Below, piece after piece: positions 13,394 to 26,263 of a DNA stretch of 64,000 nt; the first letter of the stretch is position 1; every line of letters begins with the position of its first letter. The notes below the pieces were generated by a model. The model did no database searches, was not told where the DNA came from, and worked only from the letters and a program-made list of their open reading frames with translations. The DNA lies in IMG/VR virus record IMGVR_UViG_3300048625_000299, positions 124,001 to 188,000 of that record; one strand, given 5' to 3'. Both the position numbers and the translations under genes were made by a program.

Positions 13394-13921
13394 TCAATAT
13401 CTCTTTAGCCAGTCCTTGATTTCAGGCGTACGTCCCCAATCCCATCCATTAGGCAATTCGGCCAGCCTCTTCTCATTACCAGTCTTAGGGCAATGACACC
13501 ATCTTCTACCAGCAACAGTAGATTTGCCCATTCTAGCTATACTAACAAGAGTCTTAGACATAGCAGACTTCCTAGAGCCCAATGCATTACTAGGCCTACC
13601 ACGCTTAGAGTCAGCCATCTTAGCCTTGGTCTCATCAGACATTACCTTACCAGTATTAGCGGCCTTGACAGCATTAACCATCCTCAACTTCTCTTCATCG
13701 GTGAAGTATTTCCAGCCCCATTTCTTCTTAACAACACACCCTTCAATAACAATAGTGCAATTGTATTGCTTCTTTAGGCGCTCAATAACAGCATCATAAT
13801 TGCCAGAATCTTTGATTGTAGAGACCTTTTCCCACTCTCGACCCCATTCGTTGTAAAAAAGTTTATCGCCCTTATCGTCGGTTCTAAGCGTTCCTTGCCG
13901 CATGTAAACAGATATAAGCAT
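13394..13921 (-). CDS. NUMOD3-motif DNA-binding protein (homing-endonuclease-type C-terminus, no recognisable nuclease domain)
   Basis: GKVMSDETKAKMADSKRG and GSRKSAMSKTLVSIARMGK repeats; RRWCH...ELPNGWDWGR tail. Confidence 0.65.
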   Translation of the reverse strand: MLISVYMRQGTLRTDDKGDKLFYNEWGREWEKVSTIKDSGNYDAVIERLKKQYNCTIVIEGCVVKKKWGWKYFTDEEKLRMVNAVKAANTGKVMSDETKAKMADSKRGRPSNALGSRKSAMSKTLVSIARMGKSTVAGRRWCHCPKTGNEKRLAELPNGWDWGRTPEIKDWLKRY

Positions 13922-14002
13922 ACGTATTTCCTATAATTAATTAATCCTAGTATATAGGAAATGGATAGTTTTTGTGAGAAAGAAGCGTATATGTTTACGT
14001 AT

Positions 14003-14130
14003 AGTATTATACCCCGTCTTAAACTAGTATGCACAATATTATAGCAAAGTATAGGGAATAGAGATATAGATGCACAGTATATACCCCCGTCTTAAACTTA
14101 TATGCACATAGTATAAGGAAATAGGGTAAC
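14003..14130. repeat. Degenerate tandem direct repeat, core CCCCGTCTTAAACT(A/T)(G/A)TATGCACA
   Basis: Copies at 14012-14034 and 14085-14108; related copy at 21426-21449. Confidence 0.8.
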
Positions 14131-14280: not shown

Positions 14281-14693
14281 AGTGCTACTGCTCACAGCCC
14301 AGAGTCACACTTTTGTTTCCAGTAATTGGGCAGCACAAAATGCCCACTAGCACTAAAGTGCCATGGCACAAAAGTGCCCAGGATTACAGCCAAAATAGCC
14401 ACTAGCTCAGTATAGCCCATGGCTAAAAAGTGCCAATAACGCGAAAGTGCTACTAGCTCAAAAGTGCTACTTTCATCTGAAAAGTGCCACTTTCGTGCTA
14501 CTCGGTCTATGGCTGAAAAGTGCTACTTGGATGGCGATTTCTGCCCATCAGCCAAAAGTGCCATGGCGATGGCTCAGAATAGCCAATAGCACTGAATAGC
14601 CACTTGGGCAGCTATTTTGTGTCCATAGCTAATCCTACCCACAAGAGGGCATGAAAGTGCTACTGTTAGTCAGAGTGGTACTTTTGTTTCCAG
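14281..14693. repeat. Non-coding iteron-like array of AAAGTGC(C/T)A motifs
   Basis: AAAGTGC at 14355, 14371, 14427, 14444, 14461, 14481, 14517, 14555, 14654; interleaved AATAGCC and CACTAGC motifs; no credible ORF. Confidence 0.85.
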
Positions 14694-14724
14694 AGTGAAT
14701 CTCCACATGATTTTGATGTTCGTG

Positions 14725-14753
14725 ATTATACTAGAACAAAGCTCACAAGTCAA
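14725..14753 (-). promoter_or_regulatory. Leftward sigma70-type promoter reading into the repeat array
   Basis: Minus strand TTGACT-17 bp-TATAAT. Confidence 0.75.
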
Positions 14754-14818
14754 CAGCTCACAGATAAGCTTACGATTTGGTTGGGTATTGTTGACATCTG
14801 TTTGGAATGGTGTACAAT

Positions 14819-14908
14819 GGGTAGTGGGAAGATCCTGAAGTTTGCGGAATCTTGGCCTGTCCGCTCTCCACGTCCATCCCCAGTCTGCCTGTTCGAACGC
14901 ATGCCCCT
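14819..14908. ncRNA. Candidate small RNA element E1 between convergent promoters
   Basis: Homologous to 16572-16656; no conserved ORF; rightward promoter 14791-14818 and leftward promoter 14909-14936. Confidence 0.4.
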
Positions 14909-15029
14909 ATTATACATGAAATTTTGGACTTGGCAACAGTTATTTGAATAAGCTTACACTCTGATTGGGTATCTGTTGTCTGTTTGTGACTTTGTGAGAT
15001 AATGAAGTCTTTCAATGAGGAGTGATGTT

Positions 15030-15341
15030 ATGTCTTTCAAGTACGGTGTGTCTTATAACTGTGAGATCGGTAATGATTGTGTGGGTGGTGCTGATGATGG
15101 ATTTTATTCATTAGACATGGTCGGCAATGATTTAGACAAGATTACGGCTTATATTAAGGAGCATGAGAGTGATTCTGATTTGGTGCTTGTTCTTGATGAT
15201 AATGGTGCTTTTATTGGGCAAGGTTGTTCCCAAGGTGGTGATGTTGTTGCCTACTTTGGCTACGATCACCGCGGTGATGGAGAAGTTTATCCCACAATCG
15301 TTGTGTTTGAAAATCCACAAGATTTGACAGTTATCGAATAA
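15030..15341 (+). CDS. Small acidic hypothetical protein
   Basis: Own promoter and GAGGAG SD. Confidence 0.7.
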   Translation: MSFKYGVSYNCEIGNDCVGGADDGFYSLDMVGNDLDKITAYIKEHESDSDLVLVLDDNGAFIGQGCSQGGDVVAYFGYDHRGDGEVYPTIVVFENPQDLTVIE

Positions 15342-15427
15342 CCTTACATTCTAGTTGGGTATTCGAAATAATCGTTGCTCAACTAGAATTTTGTGAGATA
15401 ATTAAATCTTTCAACAGGAGAATGTAA

Positions 15428-15604
15428 ATGAGAAAATATCTGTCGATTGAGTTGTATAGTGGAGAATGTGCTGAACTGTCATATGACGAGTTTATTGAGC
15501 AGATTGAGGGATGTGAGGAGATTACAGAAAATGCTCATTTCATTTCCTACAAATTTGAAGAGTATGTTGTGATTGAAGACAAAATTGCTGATTATGATGA
15601 ATAA
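15428..15604 (+). CDS. 58-aa highly acidic protein (not in ORF track)
   Basis: MRKYLSIELYSGECAELSYDEFIEQIEGCEEITENAHFISYKFEEYVVIEDKIADYDE; promoter plus CAGGAG SD. Confidence 0.7.
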   Translation: MRKYLSIELYSGECAELSYDEFIEQIEGCEEITENAHFISYKFEEYVVIEDKIADYDE

Positions 15605-15614
15605 GGAGAATGTT

Positions 15615-15845
15615 ATGTTAGATACAGTTGAGGTTGTTTCTGTAGAAGATGGTGGATTTTATCAAGACGCATATACAAGTGGCTCTACTGTAGATGTTGT
15701 GCTAAAACGTGGAAATGAGTTTGCAAAGTGCGAAGGAATTCTCATTTTTGAAGAACAGGATGATGAGTCTATGTTCGAATATTTTGAGGAGTGGAAACAA
15801 ATGGCTCAATCTGGTGAAGACGGATATAGCTATTGGATTGAGTAA
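15615..15845 (+). CDS. Small acidic hypothetical protein
   Basis: AAGGAG SD before ATG at 15615. Confidence 0.7.
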   Translation: MLDTVEVVSVEDGGFYQDAYTSGSTVDVVLKRGNEFAKCEGILIFEEQDDESMFEYFEEWKQMAQSGEDGYSYWIE

Positions 15846-15918
15846 GCTTACAGGGGAGTTGGTTATTCAGTTGACCAACTCTCAATTCTGTGCGACAATT
15901 ACATTTTAAGGAGCTGAA

Positions 15919-16179
15919 ATGAGAGTTAAATTCTGTTTTGTAGATTCTGGTACTGGTGAAAATGATGTTGTGACTTTATCGGTTAAAAATATGTCACAAT
16001 CTGAATTCGAACGTGTTTTCAATCAATACATCAATTATGGCGAAGAAGAGTCACCACTCCGTTTGGAACTAAAATCGCTAATTAATCACGGTCAAAATTG
16101 GGTAGCAACATTCACTCATCATTGTGCCTATTTCGGTCCAGTTTTGATTACCGGTATTGTTTACACGAATTTCAAATAA
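15919..16179 (+). CDS. Hypothetical protein
   Basis: Own promoter and AAGGAG SD. Confidence 0.7.
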   Translation: MRVKFCFVDSGTGENDVVTLSVKNMSQSEFERVFNQYINYGEEESPLRLELKSLINHGQNWVATFTHHCAYFGPVLITGIVYTNFK

Positions 16180-16267
16180 AAGTCAACAAGCTTACGTTCT
16201 GATTGGGTATCTGTTGCCCAATCAGAATTTTGTGAGATAATGAAGTCTTTCAACAGGAGAATGTAAA

Positions 16268-16414
16268 ATGAAAACAAACGAAGATGTCGTGCGTGCTGAG
16301 GATTGTTTCGGTAATTTGATGTCTGCTCTGTCAGATTTGGGATTAGACCATATTAATGATGTACTGCACGATTTGCGTGCACAGATGTTTGAAGAATTGG
16401 ATATCGAAGATTAA
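16268..16414 (+). CDS. 48-aa acidic protein (not in ORF track)
   Basis: MKTNEDVVRAEDCFGNLMSALSDLGLDHINDVLHDLRAQMFEELDIED; promoter plus SD; followed by terminator. Confidence 0.7.
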   Translation: MKTNEDVVRAEDCFGNLMSALSDLGLDHINDVLHDLRAQMFEELDIED

Positions 16415-16434
16415 GATTTCACAACAGGACGACA

Positions 16435-16456
16435 GGACACCGAAGTGTCCTTTTTT
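16435..16456 (+). terminator. Rho-independent terminator
   Basis: GGACAC-CGAA-GTGTCC-TTTTTT. Confidence 0.8.
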
Positions 16457-16571
16457 GTGTTTGGGAGGTACACTTTTGTTTCCAGGATAGTTTGGAACTA
16501 GATTAGCCAACTCTGTTCCAATATCTGAACACAGACTAGCCCGTTGTCGGAATGTAAAAATCGTGTATAAT

Positions 16572-16656
16572 AAAGGGTGGGAAGATCCCAACGTTAGCCC
16601 CAAGTATTGTTTAGCCGCTCTCGACGTCCACCCCAGTCCTGCTTTCGAATGCCTCA
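16572..16656. ncRNA. Candidate small RNA element E2 between convergent promoters
   Basis: Homologous to E1; rightward promoter 16544-16571 and leftward promoter 16657-16684. Confidence 0.4.
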
Positions 16657-16787
16657 ATTATACATCAGAATTTGATTTCGGCAACAGCGTTTGGAATGTC
16701 CTTCTGATTTGTCCTGGTATTTGTTGCCCATGTTGTCCGAATGTGAATTTGTGCTATACTGGGCGCATCACTTAACAGGAGTCTATT

Positions 16788-18080: not shown

Positions 18081-18398
18081 ATGATCAACATGGACGAATT
18101 CGAAGCGCTGCTAAACGAGAATAAGGAAATCACTGTTCTCGGCCGCAAGTTCGGGCAAGGGACTATCTTGCGCAAGTGCGACCCAGTTGCATTCCACGTC
18201 GAATATCACACCTACTGTGCTGCAGTAGAAGATGCGATTGAAGAAGAGTTGGAGGCTGATCGTTTTGATGAGGCATTGAAGCTGCTCAACGGCTATGTCG
18301 CTGACGGCGTCGAATTCCCTGATGCATTCTTCAAAGTGACATCTCGTTTTCCTACCATAGAACAGGAGGAATTGCAACTGGCATATGATTCACAATAA
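18081..18398 (+). CDS. Acidic hypothetical protein
   Basis: Own promoter and AAGGAG SD. Confidence 0.7.
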   Translation: MINMDEFEALLNENKEITVLGRKFGQGTILRKCDPVAFHVEYHTYCAAVEDAIEEELEADRFDEALKLLNGYVADGVEFPDAFFKVTSRFPTIEQEELQLAYDSQ

Positions 18399-25713: not shown

Positions 25714-25911
25714 ACATATACCATGATCCTGACAAAATCAAATAGACGCAACGGCATGGCCGCTCGCAAAGACGGCCTCAGAAGCATGTGGTGCGGCCGT
25801 TGCGATCGTGATGTTGTTGGTGATTATGGTAAGTGTGGAGCTTGTGGTTACTCCCGCAAAAAGGAAAAAAAGAAAATTCCTAGGTTGGAGAAGCTCGAGG
25901 AATTGTTGTAA

Positions 25912-26245
25912 TCCCTTCAAAGCGAAGGACTTCTGGACGCGGGTTCGACTCCCGCCAGGTCCACCAAAAGGATTTTCAATGGATCAGTGGGATGATTATT
26001 TTCCTCCCTTAAATTTGTGGAACTACAGCCTACATTGGCAGTGGATCGATACTGATTCGGAAAATCCTTCTGATGGGCCTGCCATGGTTTCGACAGGGGT
26101 AGATAGTAGAGACGGCAACACGGTAGGCGATGACCGTAAATCAAGCGAAATCTATAAATGCAAACGATGAAGCATTTTTGATGGCTGCCTAATAGGCCCC
26201 ATCTGAGTTTTGCTGGTTGAACTTGGAAACAGAATCAACCAGCAC
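25912..26245 (+). ncRNA. ssrA: Circularly permuted (two-piece) tmRNA, tag (A)ANDEAFLMAA
   Basis: T-arm GCGGG-TTCGACT-CCCGC then CAGGTCC-A-CCA (25939-25966) lies upstream of the 5' strand GGGCCTG (26075); acceptor stem has G3:U70; tag ORF 26160-26192; 5' and 3' limits approximate. Confidence 0.9.
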
Positions 26246-26263
26246 TAATTTAAGGAGTAAAAA

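What the first reader, a model, noticed from the sequence alone, without database searches (positions are those of the whole stretch)
14791..16684. Two homologous non-coding elements between convergent promoters, with conserved flanks around a variable 25-26 nt core
Seen: E1 (14819-14908) and E2 (16572-16656) both read GTGGGAAGATCC-[variable]-CCGCTCTC.ACGTCCA(T)CCCCAGTC..TTCGAA..TGCC..ATTATACAT. The cores are unrelated: 14836-14860 TGAAGTTTGCGGAATCTTGGCCTGT and 16589-16614 CAACGTTAGCCCCAAGTATTGTTTAG. Each element has a strong promoter on both sides, facing inward. No ORF is conserved, and the 5' GGG(TA)GTGG can pair with CCA(T/C)CCC. Inference: a scaffold-plus-variable-guide small RNA family or a sense/antisense RNA pair; a protein-binding decoy is also possible. 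This is my best candidate for an undescribed system, but it rests on only two copies.
Basis: partly seen in the sequence, partly recalled or inferred. Interest (0 to 1): 0.75.

Follow-up and report, generated by a model that had tools for sequence, protein, structure and literature searches.

The report
Conserved promoter-linked RNA element, T4-like phages
The two look-alike non-coding stretches are real copies of an undescribed, highly conserved element found once or twice per genome in uncultured freshwater T4-like phages, always just after a strong host-type promoter and often followed by arrays of DnaA boxes or other repeats, so it most likely marks transcription-primed replication origins rather than a guide RNA.

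Summary
E1 and E2 exist as described, each between inward-facing sigma-70-type promoters. They are the only two copies in this 234,864-bp T4-like phage.

They belong to a family of at least 85 distinct copies in viral and metagenome contigs. None is in Rfam, cultured phages or cellular genomes.

The family-wide unit reads on the window's minus strand:
- a sigma-70-type promoter;
- 0-45 nt;
- invariant UUCGAA;
- a 4-12-nt hairpin whose two closing pairs covary perfectly;
- invariant GGG(G/A)UGGACGU;
- then unrelated sequence.

A 5' leader often pairs with the hairpin loop, which would make a pseudoknot. It has no above-chance match in the phage, and no conserved neighbouring gene was found.

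Genomes carry one or two copies, close together. All 13 DnaA-box clusters in 619 kb of element-bearing loci lie 15-273 nt downstream of an element. E1 is followed by the genome's only AAAGTGCYA repeat array and an AT-rich stretch.

Best reading (about 0.4): an origin module in which an early transcript primes or opens DNA, as at T4 oriE and oriF or ColE1. Here the plus-strand promoter would supply an antisense or opposite primer. A trans-acting small RNA remains a serious rival.

The parts
14909..14936 (-). E1 minus-strand sigma-70-type promoter (TTGCCA, 16 nt, TATAAT). The start site is inferred near 14902. This is the promoter kept throughout the family.
   Evidence: 11 of 12 consensus positions. 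Every family copy has a sigma-70-like -10/-35 pair 0-45 nt upstream.
14861..14902 (-). E1 core element. On the minus strand it reads leader AUGCG, UUCGAA (14897-14892), hairpin CAG-GCAGA-CUG (14891-14881), GGGGAUGGACGUGGAGAGCGG (14881-14861).
   Evidence: Covariance model R1 scores 46.2 bits, E 1.4e-8. Hairpin covariation. Leader UGC can pair with loop GCA.
14838..14860 (-). E1 variable hairpin GCGGA-(11 nt)-UCCGC.
   Evidence: MFE folds. In relative L429 the stem is kept and the loop is replaced.
14824..14835 (.). GTGGGAAGATCC block shared by E1 and E2. It forms a small hairpin (GGA-AGA-TCC) at the plus-strand start site and the minus-strand RNA 3' region.
   Evidence: L429 has GGC-AAA-GCC here, a compensatory change.
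14791..14818 (+). E1 convergent plus-strand promoter (TTGACA, 16 nt, TACAAT). The start site is inferred near 14825.
   Evidence: 11 of 12. Conserved in L429. A convergent promoter occurs in only a subset of the family.
16657..16684 (-). E2 minus-strand promoter (TTGCCG, 16 nt, TATAAT). The start site is inferred near 16650.
   Evidence: 10 of 12.
16615..16654 (-). E2 core element of the leaderless class. It reads A-UUCGAA (16649-16644), hairpin AG-CAGGA-CU (16643-16635), GGGGUGGACGUCGAGAGCGG (16634-16615).
   Evidence: R1 scores 47.0 bits, E 8.9e-9.
16578..16590 (-). Small hairpin UGGGA-UCU-UCCCA followed by CCCUUUAUUA. It looks like a weak terminator for the E2 minus-strand RNA, which would then be about 75 nt.
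   Evidence: Terminator scan.
16544..16571 (+). E2 convergent plus-strand promoter (TTGTCG, 16 nt, TATAAT). The start site is inferred near 16578.
   Evidence: 10 of 12.
14345..14665 (+). Repeat array downstream of E1 in the minus sense. About 8 copies of AAAAGTGC(T/C)AC, spaced 17-36 nt.
   Evidence: (8 of the genome's 10 sites lie here). Conserved as an array in L429. Positions 14374-14640 form a separate RNA contig in run X1.
13900..14100 (.). AT-rich stretch (29-33% GC) with a 33-nt direct repeat, at the far end of the 0.9-kb non-coding region. Candidate DNA-unwinding element.
14725..14753 (-). Second minus-strand promoter (TTGACT, 17 nt, TATAAT), between E1 and the repeat array.
   Evidence: 11 of 12.

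Best explanation
E1 and E2 are the two copies in this phage of a conserved module that marks transcription-activated replication origins in a lineage of freshwater T4-like phages.

Shown by tool results:
- A strong host-type (sigma-70) early promoter on the minus strand sits directly before a 40-nt element.
- The element is UUCGAA, a short covarying hairpin, and an invariant purine-rich tract GGG(G/A)UGGACGU. In many copies the hairpin loop also pairs with the 5' leader.
- Genomes carry only one or two copies, side by side.
- The element is often followed within 15-300 nt by arrays of DnaA boxes or other short direct repeats. E1 has the genome's only such array, plus an AT-rich stretch.

Inferred:
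- Host RNA polymerase fires early.
- The purine-rich 5' RNA stays annealed to its C-rich template as an R-loop, or at least holds the duplex open.
- That RNA serves as a leading-strand primer, as at T4 oriF, oriG and oriE, and at ColE1.
- The downstream repeats recruit host DnaA or a phage initiator to load a helicase.
- The inward-facing plus-strand promoter of E1 and E2 either primes the opposite direction or makes an RNA I-like antisense that limits primer formation.
- The folded hairpin or pseudoknot with its invariant flanks is probably the recognition surface for a processing or loading factor.
For: - **Size and distribution of the family.** 97 covariance-model hits, 85 distinct, in 86 sources. 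Complete element-bearing records have a T4-type gp23 capsid gene in 3 of 3. The window has T4-type baseplate genes.
- **Promoter linkage.** Every copy has a sigma-70-like promoter 0-45 nt upstream on the element strand.
- **Low copy number.** Six genomes hold 1-2 copies each, usually 0.6-2 kb apart. That is unlike a general early-promoter signal.
- **DnaA boxes downstream only.** Counts per 100-nt bin are 7, 45, 21 and 8 for +0 to +400 and zero for -400 to 0, against about 1.4 expected.
- **DnaA-box clusters.** All 13 distinct clusters in 619 kb lie 15-273 nt downstream of an element. Arrays hold 5-12 boxes with about 11- or 22-nt phasing.
- **Repeat arrays in general.** Arrays of 7 or more repeats occur downstream in 10 copies and upstream in none.
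- **E1 context.** Eight of the genome's 10 AAAGTGCYA sites form an array at 14355-14662. A 29-33% GC stretch lies beyond it. Together they make a 0.9-kb non-coding region.
- **Precedent.** T4 origins are a promoter plus an unwinding element and form R-loops. oriE depends on an early promoter and has evenly spaced repeats (PMC3016281). The T4 record annotates the oriE primer RNA as antisense to gene 5, the same orientation as E1 and E2 relative to their neighbours.
- **No wobble pairs.** The hairpin's closing pairs show four Watson-Crick types and no G-U or A-C in 147 cells. This fits a structure that must also form in DNA.
- **Transcription in relatives.** RNA contigs from runs X2 and X3 (about 92% identical relatives) cover about 14670-14868 and 14670-15440.
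Against: - Only a quarter to a third of copies have an obvious array. E2 has none.
- An R-loop or unwinding role does not by itself explain why UUCGAA and GGGNUGGACGU are invariant. T4 oriF R-loops need no specific sequence (PMC3016281).
- Some copies are followed at once by a terminator (L177, L301). That suits a short free RNA better.
- The genome's GC skew shows no inflection at the site.
- The metatranscriptome of the same phage (X1) has gaps exactly over E1 and E2.
- T4 oriE has no homologue of the element.
- No replication assay or R-loop data exist.
Confidence: 0.4

Rival explanations
1. A trans-acting early small RNA of about 50-230 nt. Its conserved 5' domain (hairpin or pseudoknot plus the single-stranded G-rich tract) binds and sequesters or redirects a conserved host or phage factor, a protein or an RNA. 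The 3' part is only a terminator or spacer.
For: - It has its own strong promoter.
- In L177 and L301 a terminator follows the core directly, giving an RNA of about 52 nt. E2 has a hairpin plus U-tract at about +60 to +75.
- The sequence between two hairpins is invariant, as expected of a binding site.
- In this window the RNAs lead into no same-strand operon.
- X2 and X3 hold RNA contigs consistent with a minus-strand RNA of about 230 nt.
Against: - No complementary target of 14 of 16 nt or better exists in the phage genome or in the two MAG assemblies (Dechloromonas, Methylophilaceae) that carry the only genome-collection copies, on short, probably phage-derived contigs.
- Most copies lack a canonical terminator within 190 nt (8 of 53 have one).
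- It does not explain the tight, one-sided association with DnaA-box and repeat arrays.
- No G-U pairs occur in the covarying stem.
Confidence: 0.25
2. A cis-acting leader on early transcripts. It would work in the nascent RNA or the non-template DNA, like HK022 put, lambda nut or an ops-type site, by modifying RNA polymerase (antitermination or pausing) or by stabilising the transcript.
For: - It is always promoter-proximal.
- In most loci the downstream ORFs run in the same direction as the element RNA and the upstream ORF is divergent.
- One or two copies per genome recalls nutL and nutR.
Against: - In this window E2 points into the 3' end of a plus-strand operon. E1 faces only a repeat array and a homing-endonuclease gene with its own promoter.
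- A second promoter usually lies between the element and the next gene.
- No NusG-like gene is present.
- There is no boxA or boxB, and no put, nut or JUMPstart hit in Rfam.
Confidence: 0.1
3. In this phage the unit works mainly as a sense/antisense switch. The minus-strand RNA and the plus-strand 5' UTR (77 nt of full complementarity), or collisions between the converging polymerases, tune expression of the plus-strand early gene clusters at 15015 onward and 16788 onward.
For: - Both promoters are near-consensus and are conserved in L429.
- The same layout occurs in L106b, L188 and L314b, with start sites 68-86 nt apart.
Against: - Most family members have no convergent promoter. This cannot be the reason the core is conserved.
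- Each plus-strand gene cluster has a further promoter of its own after the element.
Confidence: 0.1
4. A mobile promoter cassette or recombination hot-spot, like the PeSL cassettes of T4-type phages or a homing-endonuclease target. On this view it spreads horizontally, and its conservation reflects spread rather than a molecular function of its own.
For: - It lies in a hyperplastic region of small early genes with repeated promoter cassettes.
- Nuclease genes are frequent neighbours: GIY-YIG in 15 loci and a NUMOD3 ORF in the window.
Against: - Compensatory changes in the hairpin and in the leader-loop pairing, together with invariant flanks across otherwise unalignable contexts, indicate purifying selection on a structure.
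- There are only 1-2 copies per genome, although these genomes have many early promoters.
Confidence: 0.08
5. One reading: a scaffold-plus-guide RNA, whose variable 25-26 nt direct a partner protein to complementary targets.
For: Conserved and variable segments lie side by side, and the two copies differ in the variable part.
Against: - The variable cores match nothing in the phage beyond chance: 10-11 nt, against a mean of 11 for shuffled queries.
- No conserved neighbouring effector gene was found.
- In relatives the variable part is a hairpin with a conserved stem (L429), or is absent because a terminator follows the core.
Confidence: 0.03

Closest known systems
Phage T4 oriE (early-promoter primer RNA with repeats; repEA and repEB)
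   Same: - Both are in T4-type phages.
- Both use an early sigma-70-type promoter.
- The primer transcript runs antisense to the surrounding genes (T4 annotation).
- Both have a cluster of evenly spaced short direct repeats (PMC3016281), matching E1 with its AAAGTGCYA array.
   Different: - T4 oriE has no homologue of the element (best R1 score 6.7 bits).
- The T4 transcript encodes RepEA and RepEB. No conserved ORF follows E1 or E2.
- T4 has no DnaA-box arrays at oriE (my knowledge). Many family members do.
Phage T4 oriF and oriG (promoter plus unwinding element, R-loop origins)
   Same: A promoter-driven RNA is proposed to remain hybridised just downstream and to prime leading-strand synthesis. 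The number of sites per genome is small.
   Different: - Those origins use MotA-dependent middle promoters and an AT-rich unwinding element with no sequence requirement.
- Here the promoter has a normal -35 box, and the transcribed start is G-rich, structured and invariant.
ColE1-type origin (RNA II primer and RNA I antisense; a DnaA box near the origin in pBR322)
   Same: - A primer-type RNA whose 5' end is covered by an antisense RNA from a convergent promoter (77 nt here, 108 nt in ColE1).
- A G-rich RNA segment favours a persistent hybrid.
- DnaA box or boxes lie downstream.

The ColE1 and pBR322 facts are from established knowledge and were not tested here.
   Different: - There is no sequence similarity.
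- The conserved part here is the first 40 nt, not a 550-nt folded RNA.
- The antisense promoter is absent from most family members.
HK022 put and lambda nut promoter-proximal antitermination sites
   Same: Two homologous non-coding copies per phage, each shortly after an early promoter. They are structured nascent RNA.
   Different: - No boxA or boxB, and no N-like or NusG-like partner was found.
- E2 leads into no operon.
- The association with DnaA-box arrays has no counterpart.
PeSL (promoter-early stem-loop) cassettes of T4-type phages
   Same: An early promoter plus a stem-loop, in hyperplastic regions next to small ORFs and nuclease genes.
   Different: PeSLs are many per genome and are defined by a promoter plus a terminator-like stem (my knowledge). 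This element has 1-2 copies, invariant flanking motifs and a covarying 2-3-bp stem that is not a terminator.

Membership tests
Any Rfam 15 RNA family | Covariance-model match at or near the gathering score | tested here: not met
   No hit on E1 or E2 at the gathering threshold or at E<=10. None on 20 related loci.
T4-type R-loop origin (oriF/oriG) | Promoter directly upstream of the initiation zone | tested here: met
   Sigma-70-type promoter 0-45 nt upstream in every copy. It is an early-type promoter, not a MotA-type one.
T4-type R-loop origin (oriF/oriG) | AT-rich unwinding element immediately downstream of the promoter | tested here: not met
   The first 45 nt are 54-62% GC. The nearest AT-rich stretch to E1 is about 0.8 kb away, at 13900-14100.
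T4-type R-loop origin (oriF/oriG) | Persistent RNA-DNA hybrid and phage-dependent replication of a cloned fragment | not testable with these tools
   This needs S9.6 or bisulfite footprinting and plasmid amplification assays.
T4 oriE-like origin | Early promoter whose transcript runs antisense to neighbouring genes | tested here: met
   for the window. T4 annotation.
T4 oriE-like origin | Cluster of short direct repeats next to the promoter | tested here: inconclusive
   Met for E1. Not met for E2. Present in a quarter to a third of the family.
T4 oriE-like origin | Sequence homology to T4 oriE, repEA or repEB | tested here: not met
   R1 finds nothing in the T4 oriE region. No match in cultured phages.
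ColE1-like primer and antisense pair | Antisense RNA from a convergent promoter covering the 5' end of the primer RNA | tested here: inconclusive
   Met for E1, E2, L429, L106b, L188 and L314b. Absent from most copies.
Guide-RNA system (scaffold plus variable guide plus effector) | Variable segment complementary to targets | tested here: not met
   Longest matches in the phage's own genome are 10-11 nt, against a shuffled mean of 11.
Guide-RNA system (scaffold plus variable guide plus effector) | Conserved adjacent effector gene | tested here: not met
   No ORF cluster is shared by most loci. The commonest neighbours are a GP88-family protein, a small GIY-YIG nuclease and small unknown proteins, each in 16 loci or fewer.
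lambda nut / HK022 put antitermination site | Lies at the head of an operon containing terminators; boxA and boxB, or a two-stem put fold | tested here: not met
   E2 faces the 3' end of a plus-strand operon. There is no boxA or boxB. The second hairpin is not consistently present (mean z -0.36).
Type III toxin-antitoxin RNA (ToxI-like pseudoknot repeats) | Tandem repeats next to a toxN-like gene; homologous repeats in host genomes | tested here: not met
   These are single units, each with its own promoter. Of the first 120 hits returned in 185,579 species genomes, only 2 have the promoter context, and both are small phage-like MAG contigs.

The most novel reading that the evidence does not exclude
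The element is a new kind of origin RNA. On this reading a short structured primer or opener transcript, with invariant UUCGAA and GGGNUGGACGU held together by a small hairpin or pseudoknot, is specifically recognised by a host or phage factor. It would couple host RNA polymerase firing to helicase loading at adjacent DnaA-box or repeat arrays. That would mean a lineage of T4-like phages recruits host DnaA for origin firing.
Probability: 0.3. Interest if true: 0.75.

Novelty: new variant of a known kind. Interest (0 to 1): 0.6.

Why it matters
How T4-type phages choose and fire their origins is still open. The T4 review itself lists as unanswered the rules for R-loop formation and the role of the oriE repeats (PMC3016281). 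T4 origins share no sequence motif.

This family offers a conserved, sequence-defined, structurally constrained element. It sits between an early promoter and arrays of initiator-binding sites in dozens of uncultured T4-like phages. If it is origin-linked, three things follow:
- It gives a recognisable origin signature for annotating large uncultured phage genomes.
- It points to use of host DnaA by T4-like phages.
- It provides a compact system (promoter, 40-nt element, boxes) for testing how a transcript is turned into a replication start.

If it is instead a free small RNA, it is an abundant, highly conserved early phage RNA with an unknown and presumably conserved partner. Either way it is a new non-coding family with good covariation support.

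Tried and rejected
- **Known RNA families.** Rfam at the gathering threshold and at E<=10 on the window, and at the gathering threshold on 20 related loci, returned nothing.
- **Cultured phages.** blastn with the 2.1-kb region and with a 51-nt element found no match.
- **Literature search by sequence strings.** It returned only unrelated primer hits.
- **tRNA or tmRNA mimicry.** ARAGORN finds nothing at E1 or E2. I considered a resemblance of CCGCTCTCNACGTCCA to a tRNA 3' end (seen in L053) and a 7-nt complementarity to the phage tmRNA 3' end. I dropped both: no T-arm is present, and the A insertion in half the copies breaks the pairing.
- **Resemblances recalled from memory.** These were the T-box, RfaH ops, boxA, CsrA sites, the 23S L1 stalk and a G-quadruplex. 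None is consistent across the alignment, and some copies lack the fourth G-tract.
- **Host origin or target.** The genome-collection scan returned only chance coding hits, plus two phage-like MAG contigs. A pattern search in those two MAGs found nothing above the control level.
- **Phage NusG or RfaH-like partner.** None was found.
- **A consistent second hairpin or long-range pairing of the G-tract.** Neither is supported family-wide.
- **Using wobble pairs to assign the strand.** This was uninformative: mean helix length 2.91 with G-U allowed and 3.10 with A-C allowed.
- **Genome GC skew as an origin test.** This was uninformative because nearly all genes are on one strand.
- **Metatranscriptome contigs.** They are patchy and carry no direction, so they cannot settle which RNAs exist.
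Full report
**Setting.** The window is bases 124001-188000 of a 234,864-bp IMG/VR phage record with direct terminal repeats. It carries T4-type baseplate wedge genes and a beta-proteobacterial-type two-piece tmRNA gene. The finding lies in a stretch of small plus-strand early genes, each preceded by a repeated promoter cassette.

**Checking the observation.**
- GTGGGAAGATCC and CCGCTCTC[C/G]ACGTCCA each occur exactly twice in the whole genome, at E1 and E2, even with two mismatches allowed.
- A covariance model built later also finds only these two copies, at 46-47 bits, with the next hit at 11 bits.
- The four inward-facing promoters match 10-11 of 12 consensus positions.
- The E1/E2 alignment scores 74 against at most 33 for shuffles. 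It extends further right than noticed (14806-15004 versus 16559-16761), through the next plus-strand promoter.
- E1's ATTATACAT ends at 14917, not 14908.
- Indels exclude a shared ORF.

**A large family.**
- Scanning IMG/VR with CCGCTCTCNACGTCCA gave mostly chance hits, but two contexts were clearly homologous.
- Wider patterns in viral, metagenome and genome collections, followed by model R1, gave 97 hits: 85 distinct, with 76 distinct core sequences.
- Of the first 120 hits returned from 185,579 species genomes, only two have the right context. Both are short MAG contigs with 37% and 46% GC, binned with Methylophilaceae and Dechloromonas, so they are probably phage. The rest are coding-sequence coincidences in GC-rich genomes.
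- There is no match in Rfam, in 50,697 cultured-phage records, or in a sequence-string search of the literature.
- Three of three complete element-bearing records encode a T4-type major capsid protein.
- Each genome has one or two copies, usually 0.6-2 kb apart and in the same orientation.

**What is conserved, and on which strand.** The alignments show that the family-wide unit reads on the window's minus strand:
1. a sigma-70-type -35/-10 pair;
2. 0-45 nt;
3. invariant UUCGAA;
4. a hairpin of 4-12 nt;
5. invariant GGG(G/A)UGGACGU, then usually GGAG;
6. unrelated sequence.

All copies have the promoter on this strand. My strict filter accepted 55 of 85. The others have GATACT or TATACT -10 boxes or a 27-40-nt leader. 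The plus-strand promoter and the GTGGGAAGATCC block are shared only with near relatives.

**Evidence for the structure.**
- The hairpin's two closing pairs are paired in 76 of 76 and 70 of 71 distinct sequences. Each uses four Watson-Crick types (CG 38, AU 20, GC 17, UA 1; and AU 29, GC 28, CG 8, UA 5).
- The covariation score is 0.85, against 0.17 for shuffles and at most 0.16 for slid registers.
- In copies with a transcribed leader, 3-4 leader bases pair with the 5' part of the hairpin loop. Examples are AUAG/CUAU, UUG/CAA, UGC/GCA in E1, GCAU/AUGC and UGA/UCA.
- Forty-seven of 69 copies have at least 3 contiguous leader-loop pairs, against 30.9 +/- 3.1 when leaders and loops are permuted (0 of 2000 permutations reach the observed count). 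This gives an H-type pseudoknot with UUCGAA in its first loop. E2 belongs to a leaderless class that lacks this pairing.
- There are no G-U or A-C pairs in the closing pairs, and G-U is no commoner than A-C in the leader-loop helix. Wobble pairs therefore cannot assign the strand, and the structure may matter in DNA too.
- A second hairpin after the core is common but not consistent (mean z -0.36).

**The variable core.** It is simply where conservation ends.
- In E1 it forms a hairpin (GCGGA...UCCGC). Relative L429 keeps the stem and replaces the loop.
- In L177 and L301 a terminator follows the core at once.
- The cores of E1 and E2 have no above-chance match elsewhere in the phage.
- The conserved G-tract has no complement in the phage or in the two MAG assemblies that carry the genome-collection copies.
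- No neighbouring gene is conserved across the family.

So the guide idea finds no support.

**Context that points to a function.**
- DnaA-box-like nonamers are very strongly enriched just downstream of the element and absent upstream. Counts per 100 nt are 7, 45, 21 and 8 from +0 to +400, and zero from -400 to 0, with about 1.4 expected.
- All 13 distinct clusters of three or more boxes in 619 kb of element-bearing loci lie 15-273 nt downstream of an element. Some have 9-12 phased boxes followed by AT-rich DNA.
- Other copies are followed by other repeats: TCTGAGGTA nine times in L322, and GCACTTTT-type repeats in L429 and the window.
- In the window, 8 of the genome's 10 AAAGTGCYA sites form an array at 14355-14662, downstream of E1 in the minus sense. 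An AT-rich stretch with 29-33% GC follows it. Together they make an unusual 0.9-kb non-coding region.
- The array is bracketed by two of the window's three copies of CTTTTGTTTCCAG.
- E2 has no array.

**Transcript data.** Only direction-less Logan contigs were available.
- In run X1 (the same phage), the flanking genes and the array (14374-14640) are covered, but E1 and E2 fall in gaps.
- In X2 and X3 (relatives about 92% identical), contigs span about 14670-14868 and about 14670-15440. This is what overlapping minus- and plus-strand RNAs from the two E1 promoters would assemble into.
- This is suggestive, not decisive.

**Interpretation.** The combination fits a replication-origin module best:
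- a strong early promoter;
- a purine-rich promoter-proximal transcript;
- one or two copies per genome;
- a one-sided, tight association with initiator-binding arrays;
- a T4-type host lineage.

T4 origins are promoters whose transcripts form R-loops that prime leading-strand synthesis. oriE uses an early promoter, has evenly spaced repeats, and its primer RNA runs antisense to the surrounding late gene (PMC3016281; T4 annotation). The convergent promoter of E1 and E2 gives the topology of ColE1 RNA I over RNA II (established knowledge).

What this does not explain:
- why UUCGAA and the G-tract are invariant;
- why many copies, including E2, lack arrays;
- why some copies terminate right after the core.

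A free small RNA that binds a conserved factor therefore remains a serious alternative. A cis-acting leader, a local sense/antisense switch and a mobile promoter cassette rank lower, for the reasons given under each rival. T4 oriE itself has no homologue of the element, so the similarity is one of architecture, not descent.

**Verdict.**
- The strand, the scaffold and the guide idea need revision.
- The element is a new, well-supported non-coding family.
- Its most likely role (about 0.4) is at transcription-primed origins of freshwater T4-like phages.

Noticed in passing
window 25852-26260 (+): A two-piece (permuted) tmRNA gene of the beta-proteobacterial type, with tag peptide ANDEAFLMAA, encoded by the phage. 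A related phage contig (L075:4638-5052) carries one too. This suggests a betaproteobacterial host.
   Followed up: partly
window 14345-14665 (+): An array of about 8 AAAAGTGC(T/C)AC repeats, holding 8 of the genome's 10 sites. Positions 14374-14640 form a separate 267-nt contig (depth 48) in metatranscriptome X1. The protein that binds the repeats is unknown. A related AAAGTG repeat (four copies, 10-nt period) occurs about 0.5 kb from the element in the L043, L177 and L312 clade.
   Followed up: partly
window 14310-14322, 14681-14693, 16473-16485 (+): The 13-mer CTTTTGTTTCCAG occurs three times (0.08 expected). Two copies bracket the repeat array. The third lies downstream of E2 in the minus sense. 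Its function is unknown. The RNA contigs of relatives end near the 14681 copy.
   Followed up: no
window 13900-14110: An AT-rich (29-33% GC) non-coding stretch with a 33-nt direct repeat (14003-14035 and 14076-14108).
   Followed up: no
window 13394-13921 (-): A 175-aa ORF with a NUMOD3 motif, resembling a free-standing homing endonuclease. It appears to have its own promoter and is transcribed in run X1. In 15 related loci a small GIY-YIG gene lies divergently beside the element.
   Followed up: partly
window ~14950-15014, 15342-15422, 15845-15914, 16190-16261 (+): A repeated early-promoter cassette (aagcttacNNtctgattgggtat...tttgtgagataatgaagtctttcaacaggag) precedes each small acidic plus-strand gene. 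This recalls the PeSL cassettes of T4-type hyperplastic regions.
   Followed up: no
L115 (minus strand), about +370 to +450 from its element: A tRNA gene (anticodon CAT by eye) lies on the opposite strand directly after the 12-box DnaA array. Four CACTATATA repeats follow it.
   Followed up: no
window 18081-18398 (+) and L090, L280, L292, L308 at +407 from their elements: A small conserved protein of about 95-105 aa and unknown function (phrog_9396) recurs near the element in 12 loci, on either side of it.
   Followed up: no
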